Shown here piece after piece: positions 23,618-52,100 of a stretch of 64,000 nucleotides of DNA (its first letter is position 1; every line of letters starts with the position of its first letter). The notes below the pieces were generated by a model, which was given only the letters and a program-made list of their open reading frames with translations, searched no databases and had not been told where the DNA came from. The DNA comes from Zancudomyces culisetae HAW-14-8. Lineage: Eukaryota; Fungi; Kickxellomycota. A program made the position numbers and the translations under genes. Location: assembly GCA_052426225.1 (NCBI GenBank), contig JBNJNM010000011.1:682001-746000 (forward strand), in the 5' to 3' direction.

Positions 23618-26600
23618 TTAGACAGATATCAACTTGATGGTATTCCCAGAAGCCACAGCTAAAACAGTGTACGAAAAGGAATGTGTAAGACCAGCGCTCT
23701 TTGAATCTGTATCGATGGGATTTTTGGGTCCGTGAGTGGTGGATTTCTGACTAGCATCGCTATTATACCCACGATATAAATTGGAAGTGTGATTTCTACC
23801 GCTGATACCACTGACATTGCTAACATTATCTGTATTTACGAGATTGCTGTTGTTTACACTAGTACTGGTGTTTAGAGGTGTAGTTGCATTTGCATTTGCA
23901 CTTGTATTCACAATGTTGTTAAAGTTGGAAATAGAATCGACATACCGAGAGTAGTCACGAGGGGTTCCACTTTGAACAAGCTTGATAGATTTGATAACAA
24001 CAAACGGAGTATTGGTATCAAAATGAAATCTATTAAATAGACTATCACGCAAAGAAGCACCCAAATTATTCGAGGCTGCAGGATTCATATTCGTAGCCAT
24101 AGAGTTGACAGACGGATGATCAGAAAGTGGATCAAACGAAGAATGGGAAGATATATCGTCAGCATGTGTTGTTGGCTCAACAAGGGGTGAAGAAGCGCTG
24201 TGGAGTTGGAGTTGGAGAGGAAGCGAGTCGAATAAAGGTGCAGGATTAAAGTCTATACAGATATCAGAGGCGGAATAAACAACAGTATTTGGAGGAGAAT
24301 ATTGCGTCAAAGGGTCGGTTTTGGATTGGTATTTGTAGTATGATGGTAGCTGAATTGAAAGGTTTAGAGGTAAGTTCATTGATAATATGTTGATTTTTTG
24401 AAGGTAGCTGGGGATAAACGAAGAAATGGATGGAGATATTAAGGGGTAGAAAGTCGAGGGTAGCAAAGCATTGCCATTATTATTATTGCCATTATTATTA
24501 CTGCTATCGTTACTATTACTATTACTGGTAGCGTCGGTACCAACATTACCATTACCATTACGATCACTATTGGTATTGGCATTAGTGTTACCTTGTTTGT
24601 CACCAGTCAAAGCCTGTGAGCATTTGTTTGTCAAAGAATCAATATTTTGATATTCAGGCTTTGTATACAACGTATTACCAAACAAAACAAACAAATCAAA
24701 TGTCCAAAGCTCCCAAGAAAATTGAGAGGTAGAACGGTAGCCTACTGCACTGTTACTACCTAAACTACCATTTTGAGCGCCACCAGCCTTAGAATTTTTG
24801 CTCCTAGATGAAGAGTCTCCTTTGCTACTAGATAATTCAAAGTCATTTGAAAGTCCAAGGTGGCCTAGTTCACCAAAAATATCGCTGTTGTTGGTCGCTT
24901 GAAAATAAATATCAGTATCGCCACGATCCAAGAAACCCCACCCCCTGATAATGTTGTAAATAGCTTCAATAAACTTAAACTTGGGCTGTTTCTTAAGATA
25001 CGATTCAATTTTTTGATAAACTATAAGTGACTTGATGATATTGAAAATGGTGCGGTATAGCAGCTTAAATAGCGCATAAAACCAGTACCGTACATCAGAG
25101 ACAGATAGACGCAGCAGTGGAGTCCAGTAAGATGCATCTTTTCTTGATGAGGAGCCAGTAGTACGCTCATTTGGTGAGACACCATCATCCCCTGTAGTGT
25201 TGGAATTCAATTTGGGTCTATTACTTTTGTGATTGTGTTTATATTTATTTTTGGATCGTGATAGTTCGGGACGGAACGAATCAACACCATTTTTGGTATC
25301 GTTCTTTCTGCGAACTCCCATCAGCAATCCTTTATTGGAATCTAATTCTATGTGAGTTGATCCAGTTTGCTTAATAAATGCAAGAAACGTGATTTTATCA
25401 ACAGAAATCGAATTCGAACATGTAGGTTTAGGCTCCGCAATGTGTGATGTGTTTAGACAAAAGATTCGTACAGAATAATCTTCGGCTGAAGAAGAAGCAA
25501 CGAATATCACATCTTCGTCATATCTAACCCGTTTTAAGCCTTTGAACGAATCAATGCCGTACCCATCGGATCCAAAGGGACTCCACACCTTAATTGATTG
25601 TATTTTTCCTGTATGTGGGTAATCGCTGCATACTTTGTTTTTGTATTGAATATCAGTGGCCTTAAAATCATTCAATTGTTCACCTTCGTCTTCATCAGTA
25701 TTGTGTTCTGCAAACGGTGGCCATATAAACGTGCAACTTTCTTCTGGGTCACAGTTGTCACTAAACTCTTCCAGTTCAAAGCTGAACTCCGGATTTTCTA
25801 CATCACAAACACACACTTCGCTGGTGCATTGATTTGAAAGGCTATGATTGAAGTAATCCGAATCTAATGTCCCAAACACTGGGTCCATTTCGCTGTAATG
25901 ATTAGTAAATGCTGTATTTGATACATAATCTACAAACTTTGAATTCATGTTCAATTCTTTCCCTACTGATAAGATACAGAGCCCATCTATACTTAGTCTG
26001 TTTGTATGTAAATTCAAATTTTGCAAATACACTGTGCCATCATGATAACCTGAGAATATAAATATCCCATTTCGATTTTCATAAATCTCAACCAGCGAAA
26101 CTGCCGAATTCACGATTCTCCCACTTCCAAAATATTCCAAAATCATTTCATTTTCAACTATTTTCCCCTCAATTGCTGTTATCGATCCACATGCATGACC
26201 TGTGACAATAAATGATGTGTTTTGGACAGTAGAAATTGTCGTAACTGCTCCAGCACCGTATTCATCCACATATCTGCATAGTACCTTCCGTTTTTTGACA
26301 TCCCATATCACCAACTCGCCACATGTTAGTCCTATCAACAGAACGAGTCTCAAATTTTCATTTGCGTCCTCATTAACATCCTCGGATGATGAGTCTCCTA
26401 TGCCAAACTCTGAAGTATTTGATTTGAAAGACGAACCCACGCCACCATCTCCACAATTTCCACTGCTATTTCCACTTGTGTTTGTGTTTATATTCGTATT
26501 CATATTTACATTTTTGCGTCTTTTCTTATTATTGTAGGTGTAAAATGTCGCCATACCATCCGATGTTAGCCCTAGGTATCCAAAACACAGGACTTTTGCC

Positions 26601-27859
26601 TTTTCGTCCAAGATGTTGTAGCTAGGAACCAATCCTTTACGAAACAAACTCTCATGGTCTCTTTGGAGATCTACAGCAAAATTTCGGGGCGTTGAATAAT
26701 TTGGCGCATCTACCTTATCGATCAGATACACAAGATTACTGGAATTGAGTTTGCTGCTATCACTAGTGTTGTATACCCCTATCTTTTGCGACTGTGAGAT
26801 GGCTGCCACGAATTCCGAATCGTTACTAAGAACACATGCTCCAACTATTTCCTCCTGAAATTTTTTTGGATCAACATATTTGATAGGAACACCAGACCTA
26901 CTAATTTGACTAAACACTGCCTCACCCATCTCTGTTTTGGAGGATTCTATAATACTTTGAACCAAACTCACACTAGAAAACCGTAATTCATCCAATCCAA
27001 ACGAACTGGGTTTCAATACATCTACACATGCACTCGAGATTGAACACAAATATCTTGTCGTTTTTTTCTGTGTCACTACCCTCTGGTATTCCATCTTTTT
27101 TCTATTCTTGGTCAAACTATTTTTTAACCGTATACTTGAAACGCTCTCTTCCGCACTTTCCCATTCCTGGTCTTTTTGCTTCTCCTTACTACTGCCATTA
27201 GCTGCCTCTTGTTTCTTCTGTACAATCGATTCAACACCTAGGCTCCTAAAATTCTTCATAGTTATTCTATCAACTCCAAGATCCCACCTAAGTATTGATC
27301 CATTTTCACTTATCACCACTATGTTTTTGTCACTTCCATCGCCTCCACCAATAGCTACACCCATTATATCCATTGTTAGCTCTTCGGCATTTAGACTGAT
27401 TTCAAATTCTATTTTTTTACTTAACCTGTCATATTCAATTGTACCAGGCTGTTTCTTCTCTCTGTAACTAAAAAAACTCTCAAGCCCTCTTCTTTGAATT
27501 GGAAGACCTTCATTCATCCCGAGCGCCTTGTTTTTCAAAATATTCTGGATCGTGCTAAATCTCATTTGTTGCGCTCCCGCCGCATTATTTTCCTTAACTC
27601 CCTCTCCTTCGATCGACTTTAAATTTGTGCTAGACTGTTCATTAAAGTCTGTGGTCGCCATGAAATTCGCTTGCTCCGCTGTATTTACCAAAGCATCTTT
27701 TGAACTGATTCCCAATTTTGCGAAATTTCCAATATTTTTCAGTGCATATGTGCTCCAAGCAAACTTGAGTATCTCTCGAATAACCAACCCAATCAGAATT
27801 AGGCCTAATATTACTTTTAGAACCAGTAAAAGATTAATCGTCAATAATTCAAAATTCAT
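23618..27859 (-). CDS. SCAP-like WD40/beta-propeller protein with an N-terminal membrane anchor and no sterol-sensing domain
   Basis: WD-like strands (IGLTCGELVIWD, VTGHACGSI, FSGYHDGTV). C-terminal LMGVRRK, WELWTFD, PFVVI and AVASGNTIKLI resemble my recollection of fungal SCAP C-termini. Confidence 0.55.
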   Translation of the reverse strand: MNFELLTINLLLVLKVILGLILIGLVIREILKFAWSTYALKNIGNFAKLGISSKDALVNTAEQANFMATTDFNEQSSTNLKSIEGEGVKENNAAGAQQMRFSTIQNILKNKALGMNEGLPIQRRGLESFFSYREKKQPGTIEYDRLSKKIEFEISLNAEELTMDIMGVAIGGGDGSDKNIVVISENGSILRWDLGVDRITMKNFRSLGVESIVQKKQEAANGSSKEKQKDQEWESAEESVSSIRLKNSLTKNRKKMEYQRVVTQKKTTRYLCSISSACVDVLKPSSFGLDELRFSSVSLVQSIIESSKTEMGEAVFSQISRSGVPIKYVDPKKFQEEIVGACVLSNDSEFVAAISQSQKIGVYNTSDSSKLNSSNLVYLIDKVDAPNYSTPRNFAVDLQRDHESLFRKGLVPSYNILDEKAKVLCFGYLGLTSDGMATFYTYNNKKRRKNVNMNTNINTNTSGNSSGNCGDGGVGSSFKSNTSEFGIGDSSSEDVNEDANENLRLVLLIGLTCGELVIWDVKKRKVLCRYVDEYGAGAVTTISTVQNTSFIVTGHACGSITAIEGKIVENEMILEYFGSGRIVNSAVSLVEIYENRNGIFIFSGYHDGTVYLQNLNLHTNRLSIDGLCILSVGKELNMNSKFVDYVSNTAFTNHYSEMDPVFGTLDSDYFNHSLSNQCTSEVCVCDVENPEFSFELEEFSDNCDPEESCTFIWPPFAEHNTDEDEGEQLNDFKATDIQYKNKVCSDYPHTGKIQSIKVWSPFGSDGYGIDSFKGLKRVRYDEDVIFVASSSAEDYSVRIFCLNTSHIAEPKPTCSNSISVDKITFLAFIKQTGSTHIELDSNKGLLMGVRRKNDTKNGVDSFRPELSRSKNKYKHNHKSNRPKLNSNTTGDDGVSPNERTTGSSSRKDASYWTPLLRLSVSDVRYWFYALFKLLYRTIFNIIKSLIVYQKIESYLKKQPKFKFIEAIYNIIRGWGFLDRGDTDIYFQATNNSDIFGELGHLGLSNDFELSSSKGDSSSRSKNSKAGGAQNGSLGSNSAVGYRSTSQFSWELWTFDLFVLFGNTLYTKPEYQNIDSLTNKCSQALTGDKQGNTNANTNSDRNGNGNVGTDATSNSNSNDSSNNNGNNNNGNALLPSTFYPLISPSISSFIPSYLQKINILSMNLPLNLSIQLPSYYKYQSKTDPLTQYSPPNTVVYSASDICIDFNPAPLFDSLPLQLQLHSASSPLVEPTTHADDISSHSSFDPLSDHPSVNSMATNMNPAASNNLGASLRDSLFNRFHFDTNTPFVVIKSIKLVQSGTPRDYSRYVDSISNFNNIVNTSANANATTPLNTSTSVNNSNLVNTDNVSNVSGISGRNHTSNLYRGYNSDASQKSTTHGPKNPIDTDSKSAGLTHSFSYTVLAVASGNTIKLISV

Positions 27860-28299: not shown

Positions 28300-29400
28300 C
28301 CCTCGAATATTTTAATTCAAAGTCCAGAATCTTTTGATCAACCAAGCTGTTATATTCTTGAGAGATTTTATATTTTTCAAGATGTAGCTGAAATTTGAAT
28401 TTCTCCGGTTCAAGATTTATCCACTTGTAAGCAATGATAAAAGTTATATCATCGCTGTAATAAAATGAAACTTCAAAATCTTTTCCATTATCAAAGCTAT
28501 TATATCGATGAAGGTTGACATTACTGTTGGACTAGATATAGATAGAAAAATGATACTAGTTAGCAATATCGTGGTTGATGATGGTCTTTTTATACTTGAA
28601 GCGGTTGCCATATTCAATACCGGTGAAGTCTCATTTCAGTTGTATTAATACTCTATACTTGTTTTTCTAAGTATCATAAACAAATTCTAAAGGTATAATT
28701 TCAATAATAATGGTTTTTATTCACCTATACAAAGGTTAATAATCCTTTCAAAAGAAATGTAGTCAAATCAACATCAATAGATTATTTGCTATTTATATAA
28801 TATATTTATAAAGCAAAGAAAATCAACAAGATCAATAAATATTTATACGAACACTTTGTGCGTTGAATAAGAAAATGATTGGATCTGGTAGGAAAAAATA
28901 AATATAATATATGTTTTCAAAGCGATGTTACAAAGGTAGTATAGTTGTTTAGATTGTGTTTATTAATATGTACCAGGAAAGTGAAAGTTTAGCATTAGTA
29001 AATTATTCATCAAAGACAGTTTCATTCTTTTGCTAATGTTAAATGAAGTGAAAAGTAAAAGCATACTTGATTACTTGATTACTAGATTTATTTTTCAGAC
29101 AGTGGTCTCGCATTTCAAATACCAATACTACAGTTTGGTGTAACTTAATGATGAATACATAATATCATTGTAAATGTTTCCTTTTGTTGAAATTTAAATA
29201 ATAAATTCCATTGAATATAGTTATAAATTGGTATTATGCTGTGGTTTTGATAACTTGAAAGCCAAAACAGTTTAGTTGTAAAATCCAGCGGATTTTTTAT
29301 ATAAATAAACAAAAAATAAATAACAAACAATGCTATGTGTTCAGCTCCATTGTAGCTACAAGTCCTAAAGCCTAGTTCAACAGCTACTACAGATGGTTAT
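28300..29400 (-). pseudogene. Decayed gene of unknown family, copy A (paralog of 40800-41890)
   Basis: Collinear similarity to copy B. Fragments KLSLMNNLLMLNF, NNYTTFVTSL*KHI, FTGIEYGNRFKYKKTIINHD with stops and frameshifts. Confidence 0.6.
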
Positions 29401-30763
29401 ACCCTACTAACTTATTTTTTTTACGAGTTTACGAAATTTATTCCTTTGTCCCTTATTTACAATTGCTACTAAATAAAGAACCATTTGCTTTGTATAAAAC
29501 AATATAGTTCTTGTAATGTAACACATTTTTTTACGTCAAATAGCTAAAAAACAACATATATAATATTATTGCTCTAGAGTTCATGCAAACATTCAGTTAC
29601 CGATATGAGTAATTTTAAACCAAAAAATAATTGGCTTTTTGGTATGATTCTATATGCTTAATTTATGCTCATACTCGGGTTCTGTCATACTGTTTTTACA
29701 TTACCAATTTATTTATTATTACATTCAACAGGGTTTAGCTCAATATAGCAGTTGTTGTTAAGCACTACTGGAAAGAGAAAACTCACCATCTAGCGCTCTA
29801 TTTACCATCGATTCAAATAGTCTTTAAAAAAAGTACTTTATACTTCATTTGAAGATCACAAAAATTTCTATACCTCTTTTCTAGATTATGACCTTGAAAC
29901 CACCAATATGCTTTTGACCCTACTAAGTTATGATTTTCTTTATCGCTCTTTTTAACATTTATTTTTTATTCCTTTAAATTGTTTTATTGAACGATATTAG
30001 ACTACCCTACCCAAGTGTTATAATTCAACTTTCCCTTCAACTTTAAATATTGATTTTCCGAAAATGCTAGAAACTGATCTAGCCAAAATTAATATTGAAT
30101 TGTTGCATATTATGTTGTAGGTCTTGGGCAATCGCTTAATTTTCGCAAAATTGGCTGGAGTGTATTGATGTAGCCTCCAATACTTTTACACGAACAACTA
30201 TGGTATCCGAGAGTAGGAAAAGGGGATTGAGTCGAGTGGAATAGATGATCATATATACAAATTGTCATTTTTCAAGTTGAGTAGCGACTATACCTATTAA
30301 ATTTTGTATATGAACTTGTTCATGATGCCTTTTTCCCTACTTTTTCTTTTATAAAAATATATTTCTTCGGATACTTTTAACAATAATAGTTAACTAAATA
30401 AACACACCTCTTACTTTGAAATAATAACCCTTAAAGTATTGACTCGTTAGTATGAACATCAATTTTGAAACTGGTCATATTATGCGGTAATCAACATATA
30501 CTTTTCAAACAGAATGTTAATGTGTATAAACTGTTAACTGTTATTTAAAATAATAGACATAAATCAAACAGATACGTAGGTGGTCAGAAAATAAATCAAC
30601 AATACCAGATTCAGCTATGAACCCTAGTAAATATACATATTTGATCTCCAATAAAATAGAATTAATCAACTCTAAACCTACAGTCACTACTCAATAACTA
30701 CTCTGTAGCTATGAATACAATACACCATTTATATACAAACTGAAATTTAGGAGCAAAGAAAAG

Positions 30764-30779
30764 AGTATAAAAGGTTCAA
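30764..30779 (+). promoter_or_regulatory. TATA-containing motif AGTATAAAAGGTTCAA upstream of secreted protein 1
   Basis: Shared with 34139-34154 (-) and 35437-35452 (+). Confidence 0.7.
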
Positions 30780-30877
30780 GTTTTTTTGTATAACTCATTT
30801 CTCTACACTCCAAAAGTATTTAGAACTTTATCCTAGATAAAAACAAATTAGACTTGGAAAAACTCAAAAAAGTAAAA

Positions 30878-31377
30878 ATGGTGAACACTCTGTTGACAAG
30901 CGCACTTTTGATTTCCTCAAAGCTTGTGGCTGGTGCTAACATCTCAGATGGTCAAATTGCCAATGCCAATGCCAATGCCAATGCCACCATTGCAGGTGCC
31001 CAGGCGGCTAATGCAGACAAAAAAACGGACTACAAACTCGAACACTGTGGTTGTCGTCATCATTATGATTATGATTATGATCATCACCATCATCATCACC
31101 ATCACAAGAGTATGAATATCGAAATGTTTAATACAGACCATTATAGAAATGAAATTGGCTCCAAAACAATTCATCCAGGTAGGTGCTACCATTTGCCTAA
31201 TATTGATTCATGTAGGCTTGATGGTGGTGCGCCTGGTGAAGGAACAGTAAAGTTCTGCACCGGACACAACTGAATGGTAGATGACATGCCTCATCTAGGC
31301 GAACTTGGTTATACCCAGGAAATATGCAGTATGATATTGGAGGTCGTGCAAACTCAGTTTACTGGTCCATTCCATAA
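30878..31377 (+). pseudogene. Small secreted betagamma-crystallin-like protein 1 with His-rich linker; interrupted by TGA, a -1 frameshift and a second TGA
   Basis: Signal peptide MVNTLLTSALLISSKLVAG. Reads ...GRCYHL..KFCTGHN(TGA 31271), then in the -1 frame NGR(TGA 31282)HASSRRTWLYPGNMQYDIGGRANSVYWSIP-TAA 31377, which aligns with the paralog C-termini. Confidence 0.7.
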
Positions 31378-31799
31378 ATTGGCAACGGTTAGGCACGCTT
31401 TGTTTAGAATTGATTCGGGTTGTGTAGTAGAGTTTCGCTTCCTTTATTATTTTTTTAGATTTAGATACATGATTTTAATCCAGTACTAGAATCAAATTTA
31501 GGCAAATAAAACTGTATTAGTGATTGATGTTGGAGTAAATACGTATAAAATATATTTTTATACTATACCAAAACAGAATATGTTGGAGTGGAGTATAGAA
31601 AACTGGAAAAATAGTTATACAAACCACTCAATCCTAGCTTTTCAGTAATGAAGAAACAAACGAAGAATTGAACATACTCCTACCTAGTTATTACTCGTGA
31701 TATTATCTTTCTTGCCCTTAGTTTTAATTTTAGTCTTTATTCTTCACCTTTTTTCATTATTTTATGCATTTATATATTAACACTTTTTTTTCTTATATT

Positions 31800-32600
31800 T
31801 ACACAAGCAATATGTCAAAAACAAATAATTTAAGTCCAAGTATATCTTAATTTAATCTAGGGAAATGCCAATGGGTTATTGAGCCCAGGATTTGTTTAGA
31901 ATTTTCATGTATTTTCGAAAATTGTTTATTAAAAACCATGTACTATTCAATTTCCTCTAGCTAAACGTGACTCTTTTTCACTAGTTACTCTTATGTGTTA
32001 AAAGAACAGCAGGATTGATCTTGTAAACCATTTTTATTATTAGGTACTTTCAATACCTATAAGTATAGTAATCCCTTGAGTGTCTGTATCTGAAATTAAA
32101 GTATAGACCTAATATAAGCTGTTTTGAACTGATGTTGTAGATTTGAATATGGATTTTACAATGGGCTACCCCAAGGTTAAGTGTAAACTCATTTTCGAGT
32201 ACCTGTTTAAATTATGGTGCTTTTCCCCATTGATTGTGCTGTGATCTTGATTTTTATTTAGGTGAATTATGGTTTTGAGCAATTTTCTAATGTGTTCATT
32301 TCTTTTTCTTATATTACTGTTATTTCCCAAAATTCTTCTTTTTGTTAGTCATGAATTTTGAAATGTAACTTGCTGTGAAGTTGATATTACTATAATTGAA
32401 ACAACTATTTAGACCATCAGTACCTAAATATATAAGAAATGCCCATATTCAATGAATTTTGCGTATGAATGAAAATCTCATTATTTTGACTATTTTTTAG
32501 ATGAAGTTTCATGAAATTTGTTAGAATATCTAACCCATATGGGCTTTCAATAAAACGACCCGAATCCACATGTATTATTTTGGGTTTCTTTCAAACATTT
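31800..32600 (-). mobile_element. Degenerate non-LTR (LINE-like) reverse transcriptase relic
   Basis: Motifs in the expected order across stops and frameshifts: TCGFG (QxGFR), INFTASY..KEEFWEI (IDFxKAYD..W), KLLKTIIHLNKNQ..TINGEK, EFTLNLGV (GVxQG), QGITI, ILLFF*HIRVTSEKESRL (LLFADD), ILGLK (KYLG). Confidence 0.55.
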
Positions 32601-33602
32601 ATGACTCTAAACCTGAAAATGAGGTTATTTAGTGATTAGAAACCTTCTACTTTAGTTCTCAAAGATAAAAAAATACTGCTAACGTTAATCTGAGGTTCTG
32701 AACTTAATAATTTTTCATACTAAAGATATAGTCATCAAGTATGTAAGAATGAACAGATTAATTCAACTGTGAATTTAACATCTAAAGTCGGTAAATACCA
32801 AACTGTATGCATCACATGTATTAATATGCCATTAAAGTATATAGCAGAATATAATGACGATTACAAACTTACTTTAATAATCTATAACATGGACACACTC
32901 TATTTTAACCAACATAAGGAGTTTATTACACTTTTACTTGTAAATAATCTTTAATTAAATCATTCTAATCAAGAGTTATGAATATAAATAGAATGATTAT
33001 TAAATTGGATGTACTATCTCCATTTATAGGTTATTCTCTGAAGGTTTTCCTCTCTTTCTAGTTTTGCCAGTGCTCTGTTTCAACACTTTAAAGATTAAAA
33101 ATAAAATGAAATTTATCACGAACATTTTGTGTAAATCACTTGACTAGTTTATATTGTACAATAATGCGATTATTGACGATAAAATGTTCTATATCTTCTT
33201 TAAAAGTATCTAGAATGCTCAAGTTGAAAAATTATCAATGTGGACATACTTATTCTTGATCATATGCGATGGTTTCCCACATATTCATTTAAAATTAGGC
33301 TGGTATTCTTACGAAGGGATTGCTAAATCGTTTATTTTAATTTAAATAACTCTATCATCAAAAATTTCCTCAAAAACAAAAAAATAGGAATAACAGCATA
33401 TCCAAGGAACAAAGTTTCTATATTTACAGAAAACCTCAACTTTTCCTAGAACACAAACCTTTGAACATTTTTTTTATTTAGTTACACTTGCTTTCTAGCA
33501 TTTCTTTCCACTTGATTTATTTTGTTTTGGGTACTAAATAAACACTAATAGGAAAATAAAAAACAGTTAAACCAGTGTTATGATCTCATAAACTTAGGGA
33601 TA

Positions 33603-34049
33603 TTATACAACCCAAGAATAAGATATTGCCCAACGACTACCAAAAATATTCCATAATTCATTAATCGAACTTCCTAGGCTCATGTTATAGATATAGCAGA
33701 GACCTCCACAGTTGGCTTCAGTGCAGGCGATGAATGCGCCTTTGTTGATATACGGACCGCTCATTTTTACAGCTGCAAAAATAGGTGACGGGTAGCATAT
33801 ATTTGGTTTGATATTGAAGGTACCTCGATGATTACTAACCTCATTTCCGACAGCGAGTGGATCATAAAGGCCGGAACCCGTACTGAATAAGTCAACCACC
33901 ATAAAGTCTTTGGGTGACATCGAATTTGTAGTAAGTTCTAGATCCCTGTTTTCATCCACAGTTTGCAAAGTTTGGTTTTGTGCACTTTGTGGAAAGGCTG
34001 AGCTAAGTACAAGAATGCTGAAAATGCTGAGAATTGCTGACTTGACCAT
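33603..34049 (-). CDS. Small secreted betagamma-crystallin-like cysteine protein 2
   Basis: Signal peptide MVKSAILSIFSILVLSSA/FP; PNICY, GAFIACTEANCGGLC, terminal ISYSW. Confidence 0.8.
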   Translation of the reverse strand: MVKSAILSIFSILVLSSAFPQSAQNQTLQTVDENRDLELTTNSMSPKDFMVVDLFSTGSGLYDPLAVGNEVSNHRGTFNIKPNICYPSPIFAAVKMSGPYINKGAFIACTEANCGGLCYIYNMSLGSSINELWNIFGSRWAISYSWVV

Positions 34050-34138
34050 TTTTGGTTTTTTTTTTCTTGTTCAATGCTAATACGAAATGTTAGATTATTA
34101 TTGAATGCGATGTAGTTTCTTTCAACTTCAAAAAAAAG

Positions 34139-34154
34139 TTGCACCTTTTATACT
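34139..34154 (-). promoter_or_regulatory. Motif AGTATAAAAGGTGCAA upstream of secreted protein 2
   Basis: 15/16 identical to 30764-30779; about 90 bp before the ATG. Confidence 0.7.
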
Positions 34155-35436
34155 TTTTGTAGACTAAGGGGATATGTACCTAACCATAATATTAAAAAAT
34201 ACGCTTAAAAAATCGGATTATGACTATGACTTGGTATTAACATTGCTATATCCCGCTTATACGAGTACAGCTGTCTGTGTGAACTACTGTAAATCTTTAA
34301 TCTTATGTAATTTATAGATACTCGATATTATTGATTTACCAATTATAATGGAACTAGGATAGCTAACATCAGTATAGATGAGTCTATATTTAGTAAATTT
34401 ATATATAATAATATGTGTAGCGACCGACAGCTAATTATAGATTTTTATAAAAGTATAGTAAACTAAGACTATCTGCGAGTAACATCAACATATGAATATA
34501 TCACGTTGTGTGATATATTACACTGTGATTTAGATAATGAGTCTATCACTAAGTTTATTAATAGCAAAATGCCTTTGAATAACTCATTAGTGTAAGTTCT
34601 GTCCTCCTAGAGGCTAGAACTTTAAAATTGCTACTCGCCTTTTACAATGCTTTTTGGTCTTGCTTGGTATGTGATGTATTCTTAGGGGAGAGGTCTAAAA
34701 ACGTAATTTTAGGTTAACAACAAATTTGTAATTATTACCAAACTAATAAAAAAATCAATAATTGCCTCTTGTCGGGAAGAACTGAGCTAAGTAGCTTTTC
34801 TTGAAATTGCAGGAACGGATCATTTTGTCGATTTTACAGCTTTTCCAAGAACACCTAATGGTATGTGGATTTATTTTTCTCTTTTTAATGAGAATTTTGT
34901 GGAATAGTGTTATTTTTAGACAAACTTAAAATGTCGCTCTAAATCAATCTTCTCAAGTAGTAAATCGATTTTGAATGTGATATTTTGTATTTTGATTACA
35001 TAATCTTATTACTTGTTGGGATTAAACGCTCTTAAACTATCGGAACTGCGAAATGAAAAAATCGGAACAGAGTTAGTGTTGATTAGGTAATAATTACAAA
35101 TTTTTTTCAATCTACCAGTAACGATAGTGTATACTCAAAAGTAGAAAAAATTGCTTAACAATCTTATAAAGTACACTTGTTCTAGTAAATCACCACAATG
35201 TGTCTAAAAGATACAAAAAAGTTATCAAAGGTTAAAATTAGAAGCTATATACTACAAAGTTGTCAAAATATATCACATCCTAGTACATTGACTTTCAATC
35301 CGATGTTCTTGGTTGCTGAGCTGCTCTTCACCTCTCTAAAATTAGAATGCTGTTACAAAGTAGTTAAAAATAACACAGTTAGATATCATTAATACAAGCT
35401 AAAGATAGTTATAGAAAAAAATTTATGATGAGGAAA

Positions 35437-35452
35437 AGTATGAAAGGTTCAA
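35437..35452 (+). promoter_or_regulatory. Motif AGTATGAAAGGTTCAA upstream of secreted protein 3
   Basis: 15/16 identical to 30764-30779; about 157 bp before the ATG. Confidence 0.65.
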
Positions 35453-35608
35453 AGTATCACTGGAATAAAAAAATATCAACTTTGGTATTTCATCAAGCAT
35501 CACAATAAGACATACTCATACTATTATTCATAGTCATAGTCATCGACATTTCCACACTGCATCAGTGCATTAACCTCTCACAATTTTATTTAAATTCGAG
35601 TAACAAAT

Positions 35609-35968
35609 ATGGTAAAGTCAACACTAGCACTTCTCGCAGCCGCAGTTGCCGCATTTCCAGTAAACGCCTCATTCCAAACCCTACACGCCAAGATATTTTC
35701 AGGTTATCGTTTTTCTGGTGTTGTCGTGGACGAATTCCAAATGGTAAAACACCAATGTTATAACATTAACCAGGGTACCTCAGCACAATTTCTTGACCCC
35801 ACAGATGGATCAGGAGTAATGTTGTTATGTAGGCAAAGGAATTGTCAGGGTGTATGTACAGCTAACGCCGATTTTATAAGTACAGGTCTGTGGAATTTCC
35901 CAGAAGATCTCAAACCAGGCCCTCTCTCAATGAAATGGATAGCATTTGGTCAGGCTTCTAATGAATAA
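35609..35968 (+). CDS. Small secreted betagamma-crystallin-like cysteine protein 3
   Basis: Signal peptide MVKSTLALLAAAVAA/FP; KIFSGYRFSG (FxxxxFxG), HQCYN, GVMLLCRQRNCQGVC, LSMKW. Confidence 0.82.
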   Translation: MVKSTLALLAAAVAAFPVNASFQTLHAKIFSGYRFSGVVVDEFQMVKHQCYNINQGTSAQFLDPTDGSGVMLLCRQRNCQGVCTANADFISTGLWNFPEDLKPGPLSMKWIAFGQASNE

Positions 35969-36199
35969 AATTTCTGACTCTTTAAATTGGAATACACTAT
36001 TACTTTAGAACCAAGTTTAGTTGGTAGTAAAATTGTTTTTATTTATCTAGAACTTGTGCTTGAATAAAGTGCCAATCACATCACCAAAGCTGGTAAACAT
36101 ATCCTGCTTTGAAATGGTTATAACTACAATCTACTCACACTAAGGTAGATATATTTTAGTTTGAGCAAAAATATTTTCATACTGCAACGAGTCTACTGA

Positions 36200-38050
36200 G
36201 GACCATTATGTCTGATAGGTAAAGAATATCAAATAGTATATATCAAACCTATTCCTTTCTGCCCCATTAGAAACTCCATACCCACAGGTTATTGGTTTGA
36301 AGAGTTTATTTCTACTCTGAGTCAATCTAAGATAATAACACTCGCTCGACAGACACCATTCTAAAATTTTACTGTGCTCTGCTTGACCAAGGATAGTATT
36401 TTGTCTTGTCTCTTCTTTATAGGTAGAGTAACCAGCCCTTGCGACTCCTCTCCAAGGATTCCACCCACAATAAATTATTCTACGCTTGTCTCCCCCTACT
36501 CTCATTACATTTCCCTTTTTCAGTTTTTTGATAACTTTGTGATGTATTGTTGCAGATACGATTTCTTAACTATTACCCATTAATTGCAGTCAAAAATTAT
36601 GATCTATCCGGTTTTTTTACACCAAAAAACGACTAAGTACAGATAGTTTACTTATTACTGGTGTAGTTGAGTATCTTTTTAGAGCTTCATCCATTTAGTC
36701 AAACACCCTGAATCTAATCTTAATTTACTCAACATTGATAATATTTACTAGCTTGTTATGATTTACGCTACCCTCAATTTTGATTTTCCCTCCCTTTATA
36801 TAATATACTGTGAATCTTATTCTCCTTTACAATCAAACATGTATCTCTCAACTAAAATAACAGTAATTTAAACCATTATCATCACGTACTCTCGCCTAAT
36901 CAAACCATATTAACTCAGTTCTCACTCCTATTCTGCGATTTTTTTTACTTTTTTTATTAAACAAAGACACTTAAATTAATATATTTTAGCAAACATATTA
37001 CATAACAATAATTTTTTAGGCACCAAGAATATTTATCCATGAGCAAGTGCCTAATTGTTTGTTTTCGTCTAATTCGTTCCATATCTTTTCGTTATCTGTT
37101 TTTATATATTCTATCTAGTGTTAAATAATTTAAAACCCATCAAAAACTTATTAAATACGTTCTATAAACGTGTAGCGAGCAAGTTTCGTATACTGCTGCC
37201 ATGAATATCTTTTGATTTTTTATGTATTCGTTCGTATCTGAGGAAACTTAATTTTATTGAAAAATAGTATGGTTATAGTCCAGATAACTGAGCGGCTTTT
37301 TTAACTAAGCTTAACGAAGATAGCTGAATATCAATTAACAATTGTGTATTATCATTCAACGATTGTAGCAATGAATAGCAGTTCAACCCTGTTCTTTTTA
37401 CAAAATCTAAAAAATGAATACAAAATGCTATCTTATAACCAGTTCCTATAACTGGATCGATTATCCTTGTCTCACCCTTCAGATAGCATAAGGGCATTAA
37501 CACCTTTTTTCTATTTTTGAGTTCTTGCTTTCTTCAATTTAAAATAAACAACTAGTATTTTATATCCTGTACTTACTATTTGGGGTTAGTCGGGTCTACT
37601 GAGAATCACTGTCAAATGGGGTTGGGCGTAACTCCATCTTTTGTCGGTTTCTTCATTTGTAAAATAATTTGATCCACAATGTCAGCAAATTAATCATGTG
37701 ATTCTTCGGAATCTACTTTCATAGAAGTTGCTCCCGAGCAATCACTATCAGATTAATATTAGTCCTCATCTTTAGCTGTCTGGGTCGATGCGGTTCTTTG
37801 TTTACCCATGAAGTCTGACATGTTTGTGTGAGATTTTAATAGTTTTCTTGTTTATCTTTACACTTGATATTTATTAATTAGTCGTAGCACTATTCCAAAT
37901 AAACTTCTTAATTATTCTAAACCTGGATTTCTGTTCACAATTGTTAGTTATTTATCTTAGTATTTTTCTGACCAAAACTATTAAAGAGCTAATCAATCCT
38001 CTAATTAGTTTTCCTTTGAGTATATATATCCTATCATAATTTCAAATCAC
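36200..38050 (-). mobile_element. Possible decayed gag/aspartic-protease region of an LTR retrotransposon
   Basis: The 5' part is a stop-riddled copy of ORF 39545-39829 (MSDFMGK..SGATSMKVDSEESHD*FADIVD). Downstream fragments GLVTLPI..TVKF..VGMEFL resemble a retropepsin C-half. Confidence 0.35.
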
Positions 38051-39544: not shown

Positions 39545-40040
39545 TTAGTGGTAATCAAACCCTCTTATGCTTGAATAGAAGAATATTACATATATTTTCT
39601 TGATTTTTGGTGGGTACTGTCGGGTGAGGTTGAGTGCAGCCTCATCCTTTGTCGGGTTTTTCAATTGTAAAAAAACATGATCCATAATATCAGCAAATGG
39701 GTCACGTGATTCTTTGGGATCCACTTCCATAGAAGTGGCTCCCGAACGGTCACTATCAGATGAGTATCTGCCCTCATCTTTTTCTGACTGGATCCATCTG
39801 GGTCTAAATTTACTCATGAAGCCTGACATTCTCTATGTGAGATTTTAATAGTTTCTAATATGTCAAAACTTAATATTCATTAACTAGCCGTAGCACTATT
39901 CCTAATAAACTTCTTAATTATCCTAAACCTGGATTTTAATTCTGAATTGATATTTATTTATCTTACTTTCCTTTTTCTTATTAAAACTATCAAAAGAGCT
40001 GAGGAATCCTCATCGAGTCTTCCTTCGCTTATATATATAC
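39545..40040 (-). mobile_element. Truncated ORF (MSGFMSKFRPRW..) with ~200-bp leader, duplicated at ~37600-38030; probable 5' end of a retroelement
   Basis: The leader (GTAGCACTATTCC..AACTTCTTAATTA..AAACCTGGATTT) and first ~70 codons align with the 37.6-38.0 kb copy. Confidence 0.45.
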
Positions 40041-40799: not shown

Positions 40800-41890
40800 A
40801 TAGGTTCCTTTCCAGAGCTAATTTTCTGAGATCGTTCTTGTTATATTTGTGATTTAGTTCAATTAGCTTTAATTTGATCACTTGTTTAATCCGGGATAAA
40901 TACTTACAGTATTCTAAATAAAAATACGCAATCGCAACCGCAATCGCAACCGCAATCGCAATCGCCATCAGGAAAATCGGGAATTCTACAACTATCAAGC
41001 TAAGTAAAAATTTGAAGTCCATGTTTCCAAATATTAAGCCGAAGATTAAAATCAACTTTAGATTTAAAAATATTACTAGCGTAATTTTCGTTAGCCTCTT
41101 TATCGTGATTGACGATAGTATTTTTATATCTAAGGCTGTTGCCATATTAAGTACCGGCGAACTTTTTATTCCAGTTGTAGGTATATTCTATACTTGTTAA
41201 TTTCTTTATAATAAACAAACTTTAGATATATGCAAAATATAATGAACTTTATTGTTATATATTCAAAGTCCGATAATTTTTAAAAATGGATAAACATTTA
41301 TTCAACATCAATAAATATTTCAATAGACTTTTTGTGAGTTGAATGAGGAAATGTATTGTATATGATATAAAAAAAAAAGTGAAATATATGTTTCCAAAGT
41401 GATATTACAAAGGCAGTATAGTTGTTTATGTTTTACACTGTGGTGTCACGGATACACAGAAAGTTCAGCATTAACAAATTATTCATCAAAAACAGTTTCT
41501 TTTATTTTGCCAGTGTTGAAAGAAAAAGTAGAATGGAAAAAGACTTAATAACAGACTCTATTTTTTAAACGGCAGTCTCACACCTGGTAAACCTTTATTA
41601 CAGCTTGATGTAATTTACTATTAACTGCCTAGTATTTTTGTTTATTGTTATCTTTTTGTTGAAAGATAAATCATAAGCGTCATTGATTTTAGTCTTGAAA
41701 AAGTTACTATGTTGTGACTTTATTCCACTGCAAGGCAAATAACAGTTTAGTTGTGAAAAAATCAATAGTATTATTTATATTGAAATAGCTAACAAATAAA
41801 CACCAAGTAATAATAGAGTTGAAATCATGGTAACTAAAGACCTAAATCCTGACTAATTGGATATAATAATGGATGGTTGTATTTACCGCT
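40800..41890 (-). pseudogene. Decayed gene of unknown family, copy B
   Basis: Fragments KLFLMNNLLMLNF, NNYTAFVISLWKHIF, FAGT*YGNSLRYKNTIVNHD; possible signal-like start MISTLLLLGVYLLAISI near 41828. Confidence 0.6.
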
Positions 41891-49112: not shown

Positions 49113-52100
49113 ATGTCGATATCCGAACAATTGTACCGAATGAAAACGGTTGACCGAGCGGCAACCAGTGAGGCAGCACAGTTCCAACGTGCATCACTGT
49201 TGTTTGATTCGAGGCAGGCAGGAGATATGAGTATGGAGGATATATACGAGATTGGAATAGAAGGGTTAAGAGAATTGATTAGCTTAGAAGAAAGCATCAG
49301 TAAAGCAGGAACTGGAGTAGGGGTAGGGGTAGGGGTAGGAGCAGAAAGGGTGAAGAAAGAGAAGAATAAGAAGAGGAGTGTGTTTAAAAAGTACGAGACT
49401 ACATTGTTGGGACCAGGGAGTATATATCGGGACAGAATATTGGAGGGAGCAGATTCGAATAAAGAGTTGGATGAGGAGATTAACGAGTTGTTGATGGATC
49501 TTGCGCCATATTTTTTGGTACGGTCAGCGACCAAGGTCTTGGAATGGTTGGTGAGAAGGTACCGGGTTAATGAGCTAAATGTGGAAATGTTGGTACAGAC
49601 ATTTATGCCATACCATATGAGTGAGGAGTATTTGGTATTATTGGGGGCGATTAGATTTCCTACAGAACTATTGGTTGATGCAAATAAAGGAGGAGCAAGC
49701 GCAAGTGGGAGTGGGAGTGCAAAATACAAGTATTTAGTGGCACAAAGAAAGAGTAGAACAGTATTGGATCGACAAACACTTCTTGGGCAAATGCGACACG
49801 ATGAATCGGTATTACGGGATATTAATACAAATGTCTATAATACCACGATGGTACATGGTAAGGGGCACCAAGCGTTGTATACAATGTATGTGGCACTGAA
49901 TGTGGAGTACTTGGAGACGGTGAAGCAGTTGAGTGAACAGCAAGCCGAGTATTTTGTTTCAATGATAATCCGAGGGATCAACAAGGCGAATTCAACAATG
50001 TCTAGTGTTAAAAAGAATCAAGAAATTGGGACCAATAATGATATGATTGAATCGTTGATGGAATACCAAACAGCAAATTTGATAATATTGAGTACTCTGA
50101 TGTTTGAAAAGAGTCAAAATTTTACACTTGAGCTAATTTTGCAAATTTTCCAGACGGTTAGCAAGAAAATAATGGATAAAAGTCTCAAGACCAAATTCTT
50201 AACCATGTTGATGTACCATCAACTAAGAGTACATGGAACTAGTCGATTTAATAATTTGTTGTTACTATCAACAACAAAAGCAACTGATTCTAATACCAAT
50301 TCAAATTCGGGTAATTATGCTAATAATCAAGGTTCTGGATATTTGATCAAGGAATTGCTTAATAATGGAATTGTAAAGGAATTGATAAAATCCTTTTTGG
50401 GATTGGTATCAGAAAATGAACAACCTACACTTGGAACCTTGGGGTTGATACTTAAGGCGATGATAGAATTGAGTATAAAGTATATTGCTGATGGTGATAA
50501 GTATGTTGTTGAATTATTGACAGAATTGGTGAAATCAAAAGTATTTTCAAAAATCAACACGATAATTTATCAAAGTGGAATTGAAAATGGAATTGAAAGT
50601 GGAATTGAATGGAGTAAAGAGTTGGTAAAAGAATACTTGCAATACATGATTGAAAATGAAGATTCCAAAGATGAACAAGTAATAAATATTGGTTTACAAA
50701 TCAAACAAATTGTAATGATGGTATTACTTGAACAACAACAAGAAGAAGAAGATAAAGAAAAAGAAAACGTTGGCAATATAGTAAATCTGATTACTGAAAC
50801 AATATCCGAAATTATAAACAACAATAAAAAACAAAAACAAAAAAACAAAAAGAATATGGGTAATAAAATGATGACAAAGATATATGAATTGGGAGATGAT
50901 TTAATGAACCAACTATTTAACTATTCAGACGAAAATACACAATCATCAGAACAACAAAAACAACAACAACAACAAGGAGGAGGAGGAAAAAGAAACAATA
51001 AAGATAACAAGAAGAATTCTACACCAGCGATTTCACTGATGTACATTAAAGAAATCAAAACCAGTCTTTACTTGGGATTGAATTCCATTAATGATGAACA
51101 TGTACGGTTAATAGCTACCAAGGAATTAATAAAACTTGTTGATCAATACAACATTTCAAACTCTCACAATGATAATGATAATGATGGTAATACAGGTAAT
51201 ACAGGTAATACGGTGGTAAAGAGAGAAGTTTCCAAGTTGTTGAGTGATAGATTGCAGAATGAAACAAGTCTAGAAATATTGTATACCATTATTGAAAATA
51301 TTCCATTTGATTTGATTAAGGACAATATTGAACAGATTATAGTTGAAAAATTACCAATCTACAATAATAAGAATGAAGAAAAGGAAAAGGAAAAGAGTTG
51401 TTTGGATTATATAATTTCAGAATATAATTCAGCAACATTATCTAGCCAAGATTCTCAAAATCAAAAACTGGAATATACAAGTGGATTGATAACTAGGATT
51501 GTTGAGTATACCAAATTACTCGATAATTCCGAATTGGAAGTGTTGGTATTAACCAAGTTATTCAAACAATCCAGCAATTCAAAACAATTCAAGATTGTAA
51601 ATAATACTAATAATAATAATAACAACAAGAAAGAATCAAGTGAAACAACTGTGAATTATGATTTGGAAACTATTATTCAAAAACTATCAAGTTGTAAAAC
51701 TTGTAAATATCAACTTGTTGATTTACTCTTGATAACATTATCATTATCTAGTCAACAACAACAACAACAACAACAACAATCCAATGGGTTAAATGGTAAT
51801 AGTGATAGTGATAGTATTATTACACAGAGTATTGAGTGGTTTAAACAATATGCTCATCTAATAACCGATACTGATAACCTCATGCAACTCATTTTCGATA
51901 AATCTAAATTGCTAGAGTATATTATTACTTCAACTGATATTACCAAAAATGATAATAGTGATGGAAATGAAAAAATCAAGGCAATGGTTGGTCTATATAT
52001 TATGGTTGAATACTTGATGAAACAATGTCAATCTTTTGCTTCAACAACTAGTAATGATAATAGTAATAGTAATGATAATGATAACCAAAAGGTAAATGAA

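What the first reader, a model, noticed from the sequence alone, without database searches (positions are those of the whole stretch)
30764..35968. Cluster of three divergent secreted betagamma-crystallin-like proteins: candidate effector/toxin family
Seen: three intronless genes (30878+, 34049-, 35609+) start MV(N/K)(T/S) with signal peptides. They share F..(x)n..CY..G....CxxxNCxGxC..SxxW despite low identity. Knowledge: FxxxxFxG with a downstream Ser is the betagamma-crystallin Greek-key signature, a fold also used by Williopsis killer toxin and Streptomyces killer-toxin-like proteins. Here the second key appears Cys-substituted. Inference: a fast-evolving secreted family in a transposon-rich island, possibly acting on a host (insect gut, if Harpellales) or on competing microbes.
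Basis: partly seen in the sequence, partly recalled or inferred. Interest (0 to 1): 0.8.

Follow-up and report, generated by a model that had tools for sequence, protein, structure and literature searches.

The report
Secreted crystallin-fold gene family, gut fungus
The three small genes (two intact, one recently broken) belong to a family of at least 140 secreted proteins with the eye-lens "beta-gamma-crystallin" fold, found only in insect-gut fungi and hugely multiplied near the chromosome ends of the mosquito-gut fungus Zancudomyces culisetae; what they do is still untested.

Summary
ORFs B (33603-34049, minus strand) and C (35609-35968, plus strand) are intact. ORF A (30878-31273, plus strand) is a young pseudogene, broken inside the conserved C..NC.G.C motif.

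The three are homologous: profile-profile E-values run from 2e-8 to 9e-17. AlphaFold models of C (pLDDT 90) and of B (domain pLDDT 83-97) both retrieve almost only beta-gamma-crystallin domains, with Z up to 8.3. These include the yeast killer toxin WmKT, MiAMP1 and IPSE/alpha-1.

The cluster of three is a small part of something larger.
- The genome is the Z. culisetae HiFi assembly.
- It holds at least about 140 full-length copies.
- 61% of the copies counted on four contigs lie within 100 kb of telomeres.
- An exhaustive profile search of 1.84 billion proteins found 34 fungal relatives. Every one whose source I could establish is from Harpellales; eight were not assigned.
- No Pfam or PDB sequence match exists, and the calcium-binding motif is absent.
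- Pairwise dN/dS is 0.14-0.63.

Function (antimicrobial, host-directed, structural or inhibitor) is inferred only. Secreted crystallin-fold candidate effectors are already known in plant-pathogenic fungi. This scan has flagged the same family many times in other windows of this genome.

The parts
30764..30775 (+). TATA-box-like 12-mer AGTATAAAAGGT, 114 nt upstream of the ATG of gene A
   Evidence: The same 12-mer (at most 1 mismatch) lies upstream of all three genes in the right orientation. There are 4 matches in the window against 0.87 expected. A related AAAAGTATAAA(A/T)AG box sits at about -100 to -115 in most subfamilies.
30878..31273 (+). Gene A, in-frame part: signal-peptide-like N-terminus, Ala/Asn-rich and His/Cys-rich spacer (His/Cys part 31043-31105), first Greek key of the domain (from 31109), then TGA. 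Pseudogene.
   Evidence: ORF. It is truncated compared with the 164-aa intact paralog at C15:279515-280006 (L042). The family profile covers only positions 2-54 of 91.
31270..31377 (+). Out-of-frame remainder of gene A's domain (second Greek key), in the -1 frame, interrupted by TGA at 31282-31284
   Evidence: Translation. The DNA alignment to L042 shows a one-base deletion plus a stop within otherwise identical sequence. No SECIS or other Rfam hit in 30700-32200.
33603..34049 (-). Gene B, intact, 148 aa: signal-peptide-like leader (about 33993-34049), spacer predicted disordered, mature domain 33606-33905
   Evidence: ORF. Profile hit at E 2.5e-28. In the AF2 model residues 1-48 have low confidence and residues 49-148 have pLDDT 83-97, except the B-specific loop 61-70. 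The fold is beta-gamma-crystallin, Z 8.2 to 1bd7.
34143..34154 (-). TATA-box-like 12-mer of gene B, about 105 nt upstream of its ATG
35437..35448 (+). Variant 12-mer AGTATGAAAGGT, 172 nt upstream of gene C
35609..35968 (+). Gene C, intact, 119 aa: signal-peptide-like leader 35609-35668 followed almost at once by the mature domain 35678-35965
   Evidence: ORF. AF2 model has pLDDT 90 and pTM 0.81. Foldseek and VIA give beta-gamma-crystallins. It carries the canonical first-key signature FSGYRFSG and the motif CRQRNCQGVC.

Best explanation
B and C are working members, and A a recently inactivated member, of a Harpellales-specific gene family. The family is amplified to at least about 140 copies in Zancudomyces culisetae, mostly in subtelomeres. 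Each gene is intronless with its own TATA-type promoter. It encodes a signal peptide, then a variable spacer, then one domain of about 90 residues. The spacer is absent in C. In some subfamilies it is rich in His and Cys, and in others it ends in a dibasic Kex2-type site. The domain folds as a single beta-gamma-crystallin (double Greek key) module. It lacks the calcium-binding motif of microbial crystallins. Instead it is braced by two inferred disulfides, C27-C56 and C51-C60 in C-domain numbering, with both aromatic positions of the second Greek-key signature replaced by Cys. Shown here: the homology, the fold, the copy number, the location, the restriction to Harpellales, and purifying selection. 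Inferred: secretion, propeptide cleavage and the disulfide pairing. My favoured working model, also inferred, is that the mature proteins are released into the larval hindgut as very stable, mostly cationic binding modules (median pI 8.8, up to 11.2) that act on other organisms. The most likely targets are competing microbes, in the manner of WmKT, MiAMP1 and AFP1. I put about 0.9 on the structural and family statement and about 0.35 on the antimicrobial mechanism.
For: Homology of the three types. Fold: the C model has pLDDT 90 and the B domain pLDDT 83-97. In the VIA wide search the top 22 (C) and top 21 (B) rows, apart from two in each list (a fucosidase C-terminal domain, 4ni3, and an iridovirus ORF, 3rj2), are beta-gamma-crystallin folds, at Z 8.0-6.1 (C) and 8.2-5.8 (B), with 74-85 (C) and 74-83 (B) aligned residues. 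Nineteen chains reach Z 8 or more in the second look. Foldseek probability is 1.0. Sequence bridge: the family profile hits a bacterial protein with four PF00030 domains at E 8e-4 among 1.84e9 proteins, in Greek-key register. Language-model neighbours are clusters carrying Inhibitor_I36, Crystall, MiAMP1 and Syncollin (leads only). Copy number: 150 of 197 candidates were scored and about 143 are full-length at E below 1e-18. Location: 43 of 70 hits on four contigs lie within 100 kb of an end, and telomere repeats sit at contig starts. Taxonomy: 34 fungal representatives, at least 22 from Z. culisetae and 4 from Smittium mucronatum, S. culicis and Furculomyces. The other Harpellales form one clade apart from all Z. 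culisetae copies. Real genes: omega 0.14-0.63 and lowest in the Cys core; CCCC pattern in 75 of 82 unique domains; conserved promoter box. Disulfide pairing: four lineages lost C51 and C60 together while keeping C27 and C56. Charge and dibasic sites. Known antimicrobial members of the fold are cited in 10.1101/127746 and 10.1101/2021.01.25.427855.
Against: No expression, secretion or activity data were available. Secretion rests on heuristics, not SignalP. Fold similarity does not give function: the same fold serves lens proteins, spore-coat proteins, adhesins, inhibitors and immunomodulators. Z scores of 7-8 are in the range the tool calls 'middling'; the case rests on the whole top of the list being one fold. 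C-type proteins are near neutral (pI 6.0-7.6), not cationic. There is no pairwise signal of positive selection, which an arms-race toxin or effector might show. The Cys pattern (4 Cys) differs from WmKT (10) and MiAMP1 (6). No sequence match to any Pfam crystallin-clan family reaches threshold.
Confidence: 0.55

Rival explanations
1. Host-directed effectors. The proteins act on the insect (hindgut cuticle or epithelium, immunity, development), as the secreted crystallin-fold protein IPSE/alpha-1 of Schistosoma eggs acts on its host. The subtelomeric repertoire would provide variation across the fungus's many dipteran hosts.
For: IPSE/alpha-1 (4el6) is among the best structural matches (Z 7.4 for C and 6.8 for B). 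Subtelomeric amplification of diversified secreted proteins is typical of host-interaction families. The expansion is specific to the Zancudomyces lineage.
Against: The thallus sits on the cuticle-lined hindgut lumen, so access to host cells is not obvious (background knowledge). No uptake or nuclear-targeting motif was examined. Omega is below 1 nearly everywhere.
Confidence: 0.2
2. Structural or adhesive extracellular proteins of the fungus itself (spore wall, appendage, holdfast glue or cell-wall coat). This would resemble Protein S of Myxococcus spores, spherulin 3a of Physarum cysts, the Neurospora abundant perithecial protein, or the adhesin DdCAD-1.
For: All four are in the structural hit lists. 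The fold is known for extreme stability, which would be useful in a protease-rich, high-pH gut. One Z. culisetae member (P0030/P0038) carries a long Ser/Thr/Val/Ala-rich stalk before the domain.
Against: Those structural members use calcium sites, which are absent here (0 of 34). Divergence to about 20% identity among more than 30 subfamilies is hard to explain by dosage alone. No GPI-type C-terminal tail is seen in the sequences read.
Confidence: 0.2
3. Protease inhibitors of the SMPI (MEROPS I36) kind. These are crystallin-fold proteins that would protect the fungus from larval digestive proteases or from microbial proteases.
For: Language-model neighbours include clusters carrying PF03995 Inhibitor_I36. 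The bacterial bridge protein P0036 also matches PF03995. The gut is protease-rich.
Against: No family member reaches any score against PF03995. The Atlas scores are below 0.9, which the tool rates as leads only.
Confidence: 0.08
4. Not functional genes: chance ORFs or decaying passengers of subtelomeric repeats and retrotransposon remnants.
For: Solo-LTR-like repeats and retroelement ORFs lie beside many copies. Several copies are pseudogenes: A, and the two nearest paralogs of C.
Against: About 137 copies keep full-length open frames. Four Cys, two Gly, Ser and Trp are conserved across subfamilies at about 20% identity. Omega is well below 1. The promoter box is conserved. Homologues are kept in three other genera.
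Confidence: 0.02

Closest known systems
Secreted beta-gamma-crystallin-fold candidate effectors of plant-pathogenic fungi (Cladosporium fulvum Ecp4, Ecp7, CfCE44, CfCE72; Magnaporthe oryzae 'cluster 14'; the 'Crystallin' orphan-effector fold family)
   Same: Small, with a signal peptide, Cys-containing, a predicted double Greek key, no N/D-N/D-x-x-S/T-S calcium motif, and orphan at sequence level. Some have a Kex2 site before the domain (10.1101/127746; 10.1101/2021.01.25.427855; PMC10462633).
   Different: No detectable sequence relation. A different Cys pattern: 4 Cys, with C....C.G.C in the second key. Zoopagomycota rather than Dikarya. An animal-gut commensal rather than a plant pathogen. 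At least 140 copies, mostly subtelomeric, whereas PMC10462633 reports that such lineage-specific expansions are rare.
WmKT / HM-1 killer toxin of Williopsis mrakii (PDB 1wkt)
   Same: A single secreted crystallin-fold domain of about 88 aa, basic and disulfide-stabilised. Structural match Z 7.2 (C) and 6.0 (B), with 82-83 residues aligned. From my own knowledge, it is made as a prepro-protein processed at a dibasic site.
   Different: Ten Cys against four. No sequence similarity. WmKT is a single gene. Its target (beta-1,3-glucan synthesis) is not tested for this family.
MiAMP1 plant antimicrobial protein (1c01) and Streptomyces AFP1/SKLP (1gh5, 1f53)
   Same: Small, basic, disulfide-braced Greek-key proteins acting outside the cell. 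MiAMP1 scores Z 6.5 (C) and 5.8 (B).
   Different: AFP1 and SKLP match only weakly (Z 3.8-4.0). Cys spacing differs. No sequence relation.
Classical microbial beta-gamma-crystallins (Protein S, spherulin 3a, clostrillin, flavollin; Pfam PF00030/PF08964)
   Same: The same fold. The Gly and Ser of both Greek keys are conserved. The first-key signature F....F.G is exact in C. There is a marginal profile hit to a PF00030 protein (E 8e-4).
   Different: No Pfam hit. No calcium motif. The aromatic pair of the second key is replaced by Cys. Disulfides take the place of calcium as the likely stabiliser.
IPSE/alpha-1 of Schistosoma mansoni eggs (4el6)
   Same: A secreted single crystallin-fold domain from an animal-associated eukaryote. 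Z 7.4 (C) and 6.8 (B).
   Different: No sequence relation. IPSE is a glycoprotein that acts as a dimer and carries a nuclear localisation signal (my own knowledge). None of this was examined here.

Membership tests
beta-gamma-crystallin superfamily (fold level) | One domain made of two four-stranded Greek-key motifs forming a wedge-shaped beta sandwich | tested here: met
   AF2 models of C (pLDDT 90) and B (domain pLDDT 83-97) have 8-9 strands. The top of every structure search is crystallin domains covering 74-85 of about 96 residues, at Z up to 8.3 and rmsd 2.3-3.0.
beta-gamma-crystallin superfamily (sequence signature) | [YFW]xxxx[YF]xG plus a conserved Ser in each Greek key | tested here: inconclusive
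   Key 1 is exact in 11 of 34 members (C yes, B no) and degenerate elsewhere. In key 2 the Gly is invariant and the Ser is invariant, but both aromatic positions are Cys in 33 of 34. The first reverts to F or Y in the four lineages that lost that disulfide.
Pfam Crystall (PF00030) and clan relatives (Crystall_3, Inhibitor_I36, MiAMP1) | Score above the gathering threshold against the family model | tested here: not met
   No hit at E up to 10 for A, B, C or any of 34 domains. No PDB crystallin was found by the profile. There is only a marginal profile hit to one PF00030 protein (E 8e-4; hhalign probability 34%).
Calcium-binding microbial beta-gamma-crystallins | N/D-N/D-x-x-S/T-S motif ending at the conserved Ser of each key | tested here: not met
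   0 of 34 at key 1 and 0 of 34 at key 2.
WmKT-type yeast killer toxins | Sequence homology and the ten-Cys, five-disulfide framework | tested here: not met
   There are four conserved Cys. No sequence hit to 1wkt in the PDB profile search. Only fold similarity, Z 7.2 and 6.0.
WmKT-type yeast killer toxins | Killing of sensitive yeasts through the cell-wall glucan pathway | not testable with these tools
   Needs purified protein and growth assays.
Fungal secreted crystallin-fold candidate effectors | Signal peptide, small size, Cys-stabilised Greek-key domain, no calcium motif, lineage-restricted | tested here: met
   The signal peptide was judged by heuristics only.
Fungal secreted crystallin-fold candidate effectors | Expression during host colonisation | not testable with these tools
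   RNA-seq exists for this strain (PMC12611240) but could not be read here.

The most novel reading that the evidence does not exclude
The subtelomeric repertoire works as a variation system. Different subsets of the 140 or more crystallin-fold proteins would be expressed, and reshuffled by subtelomeric recombination. This would fit the fungus to different dipteran hosts or gut communities, or would shape the mosquito gut microbiota as a diversified killer-toxin arsenal. That would be an effector-type strategy in a fungus regarded as a harmless commensal.
Probability: 0.15. Interest if true: 0.75.

Novelty: new member of a known kind. Interest (0 to 1): 0.5.

Why it matters
Z. culisetae is the cultured model for the gut fungi of mosquitoes, black flies and midges, yet almost nothing is known about the molecules it uses in the gut. 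This family amounts to about 1.6% of its 8,484 annotated genes, counting about 137 intact copies. All its members are deposited as 'hypothetical protein'. It is not mentioned in the genome papers I could search (PMC12611240, PMC5954228). That makes it the obvious first candidate for how the fungus deals with its host or its microbial neighbours, and it can be tested with recombinant proteins.

It also extends secreted crystallin-fold proteins from Dikarya plant pathogens to an early-diverging animal symbiont. It shows a Greek key in which disulfides replace both the aromatic corner residues and the calcium sites. And it is an example of large subtelomeric amplification of such a family, which has been reported as rare in fungi.

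Tried and rejected
1. Selenoprotein reading of gene A. The species does use Sec (PMC12611240). I rejected this reading for three reasons. The two TGAs lie in different frames, separated by a one-base deletion relative to the intact paralog, which has ordinary Cys codons there. No SECIS or other Rfam match exists in 30700-32200 at E up to 1. I left gene A broken and built no joined or mended version.
2. Sequence searches for a known family gave nothing usable: Pfam on single proteins and on 34 domains, and a PDB profile search (which returned only chance hits to phycocyanobilin reductase).
3. Pervasive positive selection was not seen. No subfamily has pairwise omega above 1. By region, only two very short segments exceed 1, which is not robust.
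4. Accelerated evolution of B's domain. It is 88% identical to its C15 paralog, against 97-98% in the leader and flanks. However, synonymous sites are raised too, equally diverged patches occur in non-coding parts of the same duplication, and no donor paralog exists in the genome. I draw no conclusion from this.
The census therefore rests on search tables, and the alignments on about 50 copies.
6. The word-based protein search added only Z. culisetae proteins.
7. The bacterial promoter/terminator scan is irrelevant to a fungus.
8. The telomere pattern search gave only one further contig length.
9. The Atlas would not take B itself, so I used a stored B-type homologue.

Full report
**What is in the window.** Three ORFs lie at the stated places.
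- A: 30878-31273, plus strand, 131 aa.
- B: 33603-34049, minus strand, 148 aa.
- C: 35609-35968, plus strand, 119 aa.

Each starts with MV(N/K)(T/S) followed by a hydrophobic stretch. B and C carry the whole shared pattern in one frame. A does not. It stops right after ...CTGHN, and the missing half of the domain is readable only in the -1 frame from 31270, where a second TGA interrupts it.

An intact paralog on contig 15 (L042, 164 aa, 95.8% nt identity over the gene) shows what happened. The window copy has a one-base deletion within the codon of the third conserved Cys and a stop at the codon of the fourth, in otherwise identical sequence. A is therefore a young pseudogene.

I considered a selenoprotein reading, because this species has the Sec machinery (PMC12611240). 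It does not fit. The two TGAs are in different frames, the paralog has normal Cys codons, and no SECIS is found. I left the gene as it is.

**Are the three related?** Pairwise, B and C are barely similar (E 4e-4). Each has many paralogs in the genome. I built separate alignments of the three types, A4 (B type), A5 (C type) and A6 (A type), and compared the profiles.

| Comparison | E-value | Probability |
|---|---|---|
| B type - C type | 2.1e-8 | 95% |
| A type - C type | 6.1e-10 | 97% |
| B type - A type | 9e-17 | 99% |

Across 34 domains at roughly 15-27% identity between types, C27, G46, C56, G58 and S84 are invariant, and Y28, C51, C60 and W87 nearly so (numbering of the C domain, window 35678-35965).

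**Which genome.** Contig starts carry (CCCTAA)n telomere repeats. The window's contig is 5,239,357 bp long, exactly the largest contig of the PacBio-HiFi assembly of Zancudomyces culisetae HAW-14-8 (PMC12611240). Several paralogs are identical to deposited Z. culisetae proteins. Earlier notes of this scan name the same species. I checked that claim independently in this way.

**Size and place of the family.** A profile of the domain (A2) against the whole genome scored 150 of 197 candidates. About 143 cover the full domain at E below 1e-18, and about 137 of them show no internal stop. These are lower bounds.

On the four contigs whose length I know, 43 of 70 hits lie within 100 kb of a contig end. 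Those end zones make up 5.8% of that DNA. The nominal p-value there ignores the fact that copies arise by segmental duplication.

The window's copies are internal, at C11 713-718 kb. They sit in a roughly 12.5-kb island between housekeeping genes, bracketed by direct repeats at 28633-29031 and 41168-41507. The island is a mosaic of duplicated blocks:
- 29375-35514 is 93-97% identical to C15:278-284 kb, carrying A and B.
- 34101-37466 is 91-92% identical to blocks on C15 (594-597 kb) and C12 (1751.6-1755 kb).

The C-type copies in the latter two blocks share a TAA at codon 31.

**Fold.** With the paralog alignment, AlphaFold2 gives a confident model of the C domain (pLDDT 90, pTM 0.81). For full-length B, residues 1-48 are unstructured and 49-148 are confident, apart from a B-specific loop.
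- The Foldseek top hits for both are beta-gamma-crystallins at probability 0.99-1.0.
- In the Foldseek-independent search of 48,161 chains, the top 22 (C) and top 21 (B) rows are crystallin folds, apart from two rows in each list (4ni3, a fucosidase C-terminal domain, and 3rj2, an iridovirus ORF). They score Z 8.0-6.1 (C) and 8.2-5.8 (B), with 74-85 (C) and 74-83 (B) residues aligned at rmsd 2.4-3.5.
- These rows include lens beta and gamma crystallins, Protein S, spherulin 3a, geodin, the Ciona crystallin, clostrillin, flavollin, the Neurospora perithecial protein, IPSE/alpha-1, the WmKT killer toxin and MiAMP1.
- A second look at Foldseek's list gives 19 chains with Z of 8 or more, all lens crystallins.

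Single Z values of 7-8 are not exceptional by the tool's own note. The argument is that one fold fills the top of every list and covers almost the whole domain, for two proteins that share about 20% identity.

**Sequence-level link and the odd second Greek key.** No Pfam or PDB sequence hit exists. The exhaustive profile search does reach one bacterial protein with four PF00030 domains, at E 8e-4 for the whole library. hhalign places the family's G.G..hC....C.G.C on that protein's G.G.WehC...nF.G.C (probability only 34%).

So C51 sits at the first aromatic position of the [YFW]xxxx[YF]xG signature, and C56 at the second. G58 is the signature Gly, and S84 is the Greek-key Ser.

Natural variants support this. 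Of 82 unique domains, 75 have all four Cys. Four separate lineages lost C51 and C60 together and put F or Y at position 51, while keeping C27 and C56. This argues for disulfides C51-C60 and C27-C56. That pairing is an inference; I could not read the model's coordinates.

The calcium motif of microbial crystallins is absent in all 34 domains at both keys.

**Taxonomic range.** Among 1.84 billion representative proteins the profile found 37 hits. Of these, 34 are fungal.
- By source name or near-identity, at least 22 are Z. culisetae 'hypothetical proteins'.
- Four come from other Harpellales: Smittium mucronatum (three tandem domains), S. culicis and Furculomyces boomerangus (two).
- Eight I did not assign.

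In a tree, the other genera form one clade (SH-aLRT 99) apart from all Z. culisetae copies. A, B and C fall in three deep Z. culisetae clades. This fits an expansion within the Zancudomyces lineage, though the tree is unrooted and built on only 93 columns. One caveat: the other genomes are short-read drafts and may under-report repeated genes.

**Are they working genes, and how fast do they change?** Pairwise dN/dS of the domain is 0.14-0.63 by subfamily and never above 1. By region, the Cys core (residues 27-60) is the most constrained. The N-terminal hairpin and residues 61-83 are the least constrained.

Most subfamilies keep an AAAAGTATAAA(A/T)AG box about 100-115 nt upstream and an A-rich start context. 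In the window, the 12-mer AGTATAAAAGGT precedes all three genes. So these are constrained genes that diverge fairly quickly. I found no evidence for diversifying selection with these crude tests.

The leader-coding 5' ends show lower synonymous divergence than the domains. B's domain is four times more diverged from its C15 twin than its flanks are. But similar hot patches occur in non-coding parts of the duplication, and no donor copy exists. I leave this unexplained.

**Architecture and likely biogenesis (inferred).** The leader is followed by a spacer that differs by subfamily:
- It is absent in C.
- It is predicted disordered in B.
- It is rich in His with a Cys pair in the A type and in one C-type branch.
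- It ends in RR, KR or RRRR just before the domain in at least 13 of 47 proteins, which looks like a Kex2-type propeptide site.

Mature domains are mostly basic: median pI 8.8, 33 of 47 above 8, and one subfamily at pI 11.2. C types are near neutral.

**What it probably does.** Nothing here tests function. The fold is used by antimicrobial proteins (WmKT, MiAMP1, Streptomyces AFP1), by a parasite immunomodulator (IPSE/alpha-1), by spore and cyst coat proteins, by an adhesin and by a protease inhibitor.

Several features point to proteins that work outside the fungus on other organisms: extracellular targeting, disulfide bracing, mostly cationic surfaces, many diverged paralogs and subtelomeric amplification. 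My estimates are:

| Proposed role | Estimate |
|---|---|
| Competitor-directed, killer-toxin-like | about 0.35 |
| Host-directed | about 0.2 |
| Structural or adhesive | about 0.2 |
| Protease inhibition | about 0.1 |

**Relation to what is known.** Secreted crystallin-fold candidate effectors are already described in plant-pathogenic Dikarya. They are among the widespread 'orphan effector' folds (10.1101/127746; 10.1101/2021.01.25.427855; PMC10462633). This family is a further, sequence-unrelated member of that kind.

What is new is the lineage (Zoopagomycota, an animal-gut commensal), the four-Cys variant of the second Greek key, and the scale and subtelomeric placement of the expansion. 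The two Harpellales genome papers I could search say nothing about it.

Within this scan the family has been flagged many times in other windows of the same genome. One earlier follow-up (s1-639029) reached the same view of it: a real, gut-fungus-specific, secreted crystallin-fold family flanked by solo LTRs.

**Verdict.** The fold interpretation is supported. The effector/toxin role remains open.

Noticed in passing
L014:486-890, L015:487-891, L017:2411-2815, L057:1241-1810 (subtelomeres of several contigs): An unrelated secreted Tyr/Gly-rich family (..GYYGYPYYGGYY..) lies about 600 bp from C-type genes. It shares their leader: the first 60 coding nt are about 80% identical to gene C, and the next 60 nt only 27%. 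This looks like a signal-peptide cassette shared between families.
   Followed up: partly
window 28633-29031 and 41168-41507: Same-orientation direct repeats (73-86% identity, about 12.5 kb apart) bracket the island that holds the three genes. The island lies between a long ORF ending at 27859 and a gene starting near 42410.
   Followed up: no
window 37608-37959 and 39616-39965; ORF 39545-39829 minus strand: A repeat of about 350 nt occurs twice, 2 kb apart, and recurs beside family genes in other loci (L029-L032, L048, L055). Its 94-aa ORF has no Pfam hit. An earlier follow-up (s1-639029) reads such ORFs as the start of Gag inside solo LTRs.
   Followed up: partly
L002:1501-1860 (C15:595399-595758) and L003:1501-1860 (C12:1753105-1753464): The two closest paralogs of gene C (90-91% aa identity) carry the same TAA at codon 31. 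A dead copy was therefore duplicated between chromosomes.
   Followed up: yes
G000 contig 8, about 24-75 kb: Family genes recur with a spacing of exactly 17,064 bp (32012/49076, 33660/50724, 38195/55259, 41657/58721). This is a tandem segmental duplication inside one subtelomere.
   Followed up: no
window 31043-31105 (gene A spacer); also L014-L020 and L042-L044: His-rich runs with a nearby Cys pair (HCGC..HHHHHHHH) lie between the leader and the domain in two subfamilies. The run length varies between copies like a microsatellite. This may be a metal-binding or pH-sensing extension.
   Followed up: no
window 29375-35514 against C15:278015-284075: Divergence along this 6-kb duplication is very patchy: 0-5 differences per 100 nt in most windows, but 14-23 in a few, both coding (B domain) and non-coding (near 30500, 34700, 35100-35200). 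No donor copies were found for the B patches.
   Followed up: partly
P0001 (Smittium mucronatum); P0030/P0038 (Z. culisetae): There are architectural variants. One has three tandem domains in a single 296-aa protein. Another has a Ser/Thr/Val/Ala-rich stalk of about 200 aa followed by KR and a domain lacking the C51-C60 pair.
   Followed up: no
window 12138-15812 plus strand, 23618-27859 minus strand, 49113-56981 plus strand: Three very long uninterrupted ORFs (1224, 1413 and 2622 aa) have no Pfam match at E of 1e-5 or better.
   Followed up: no
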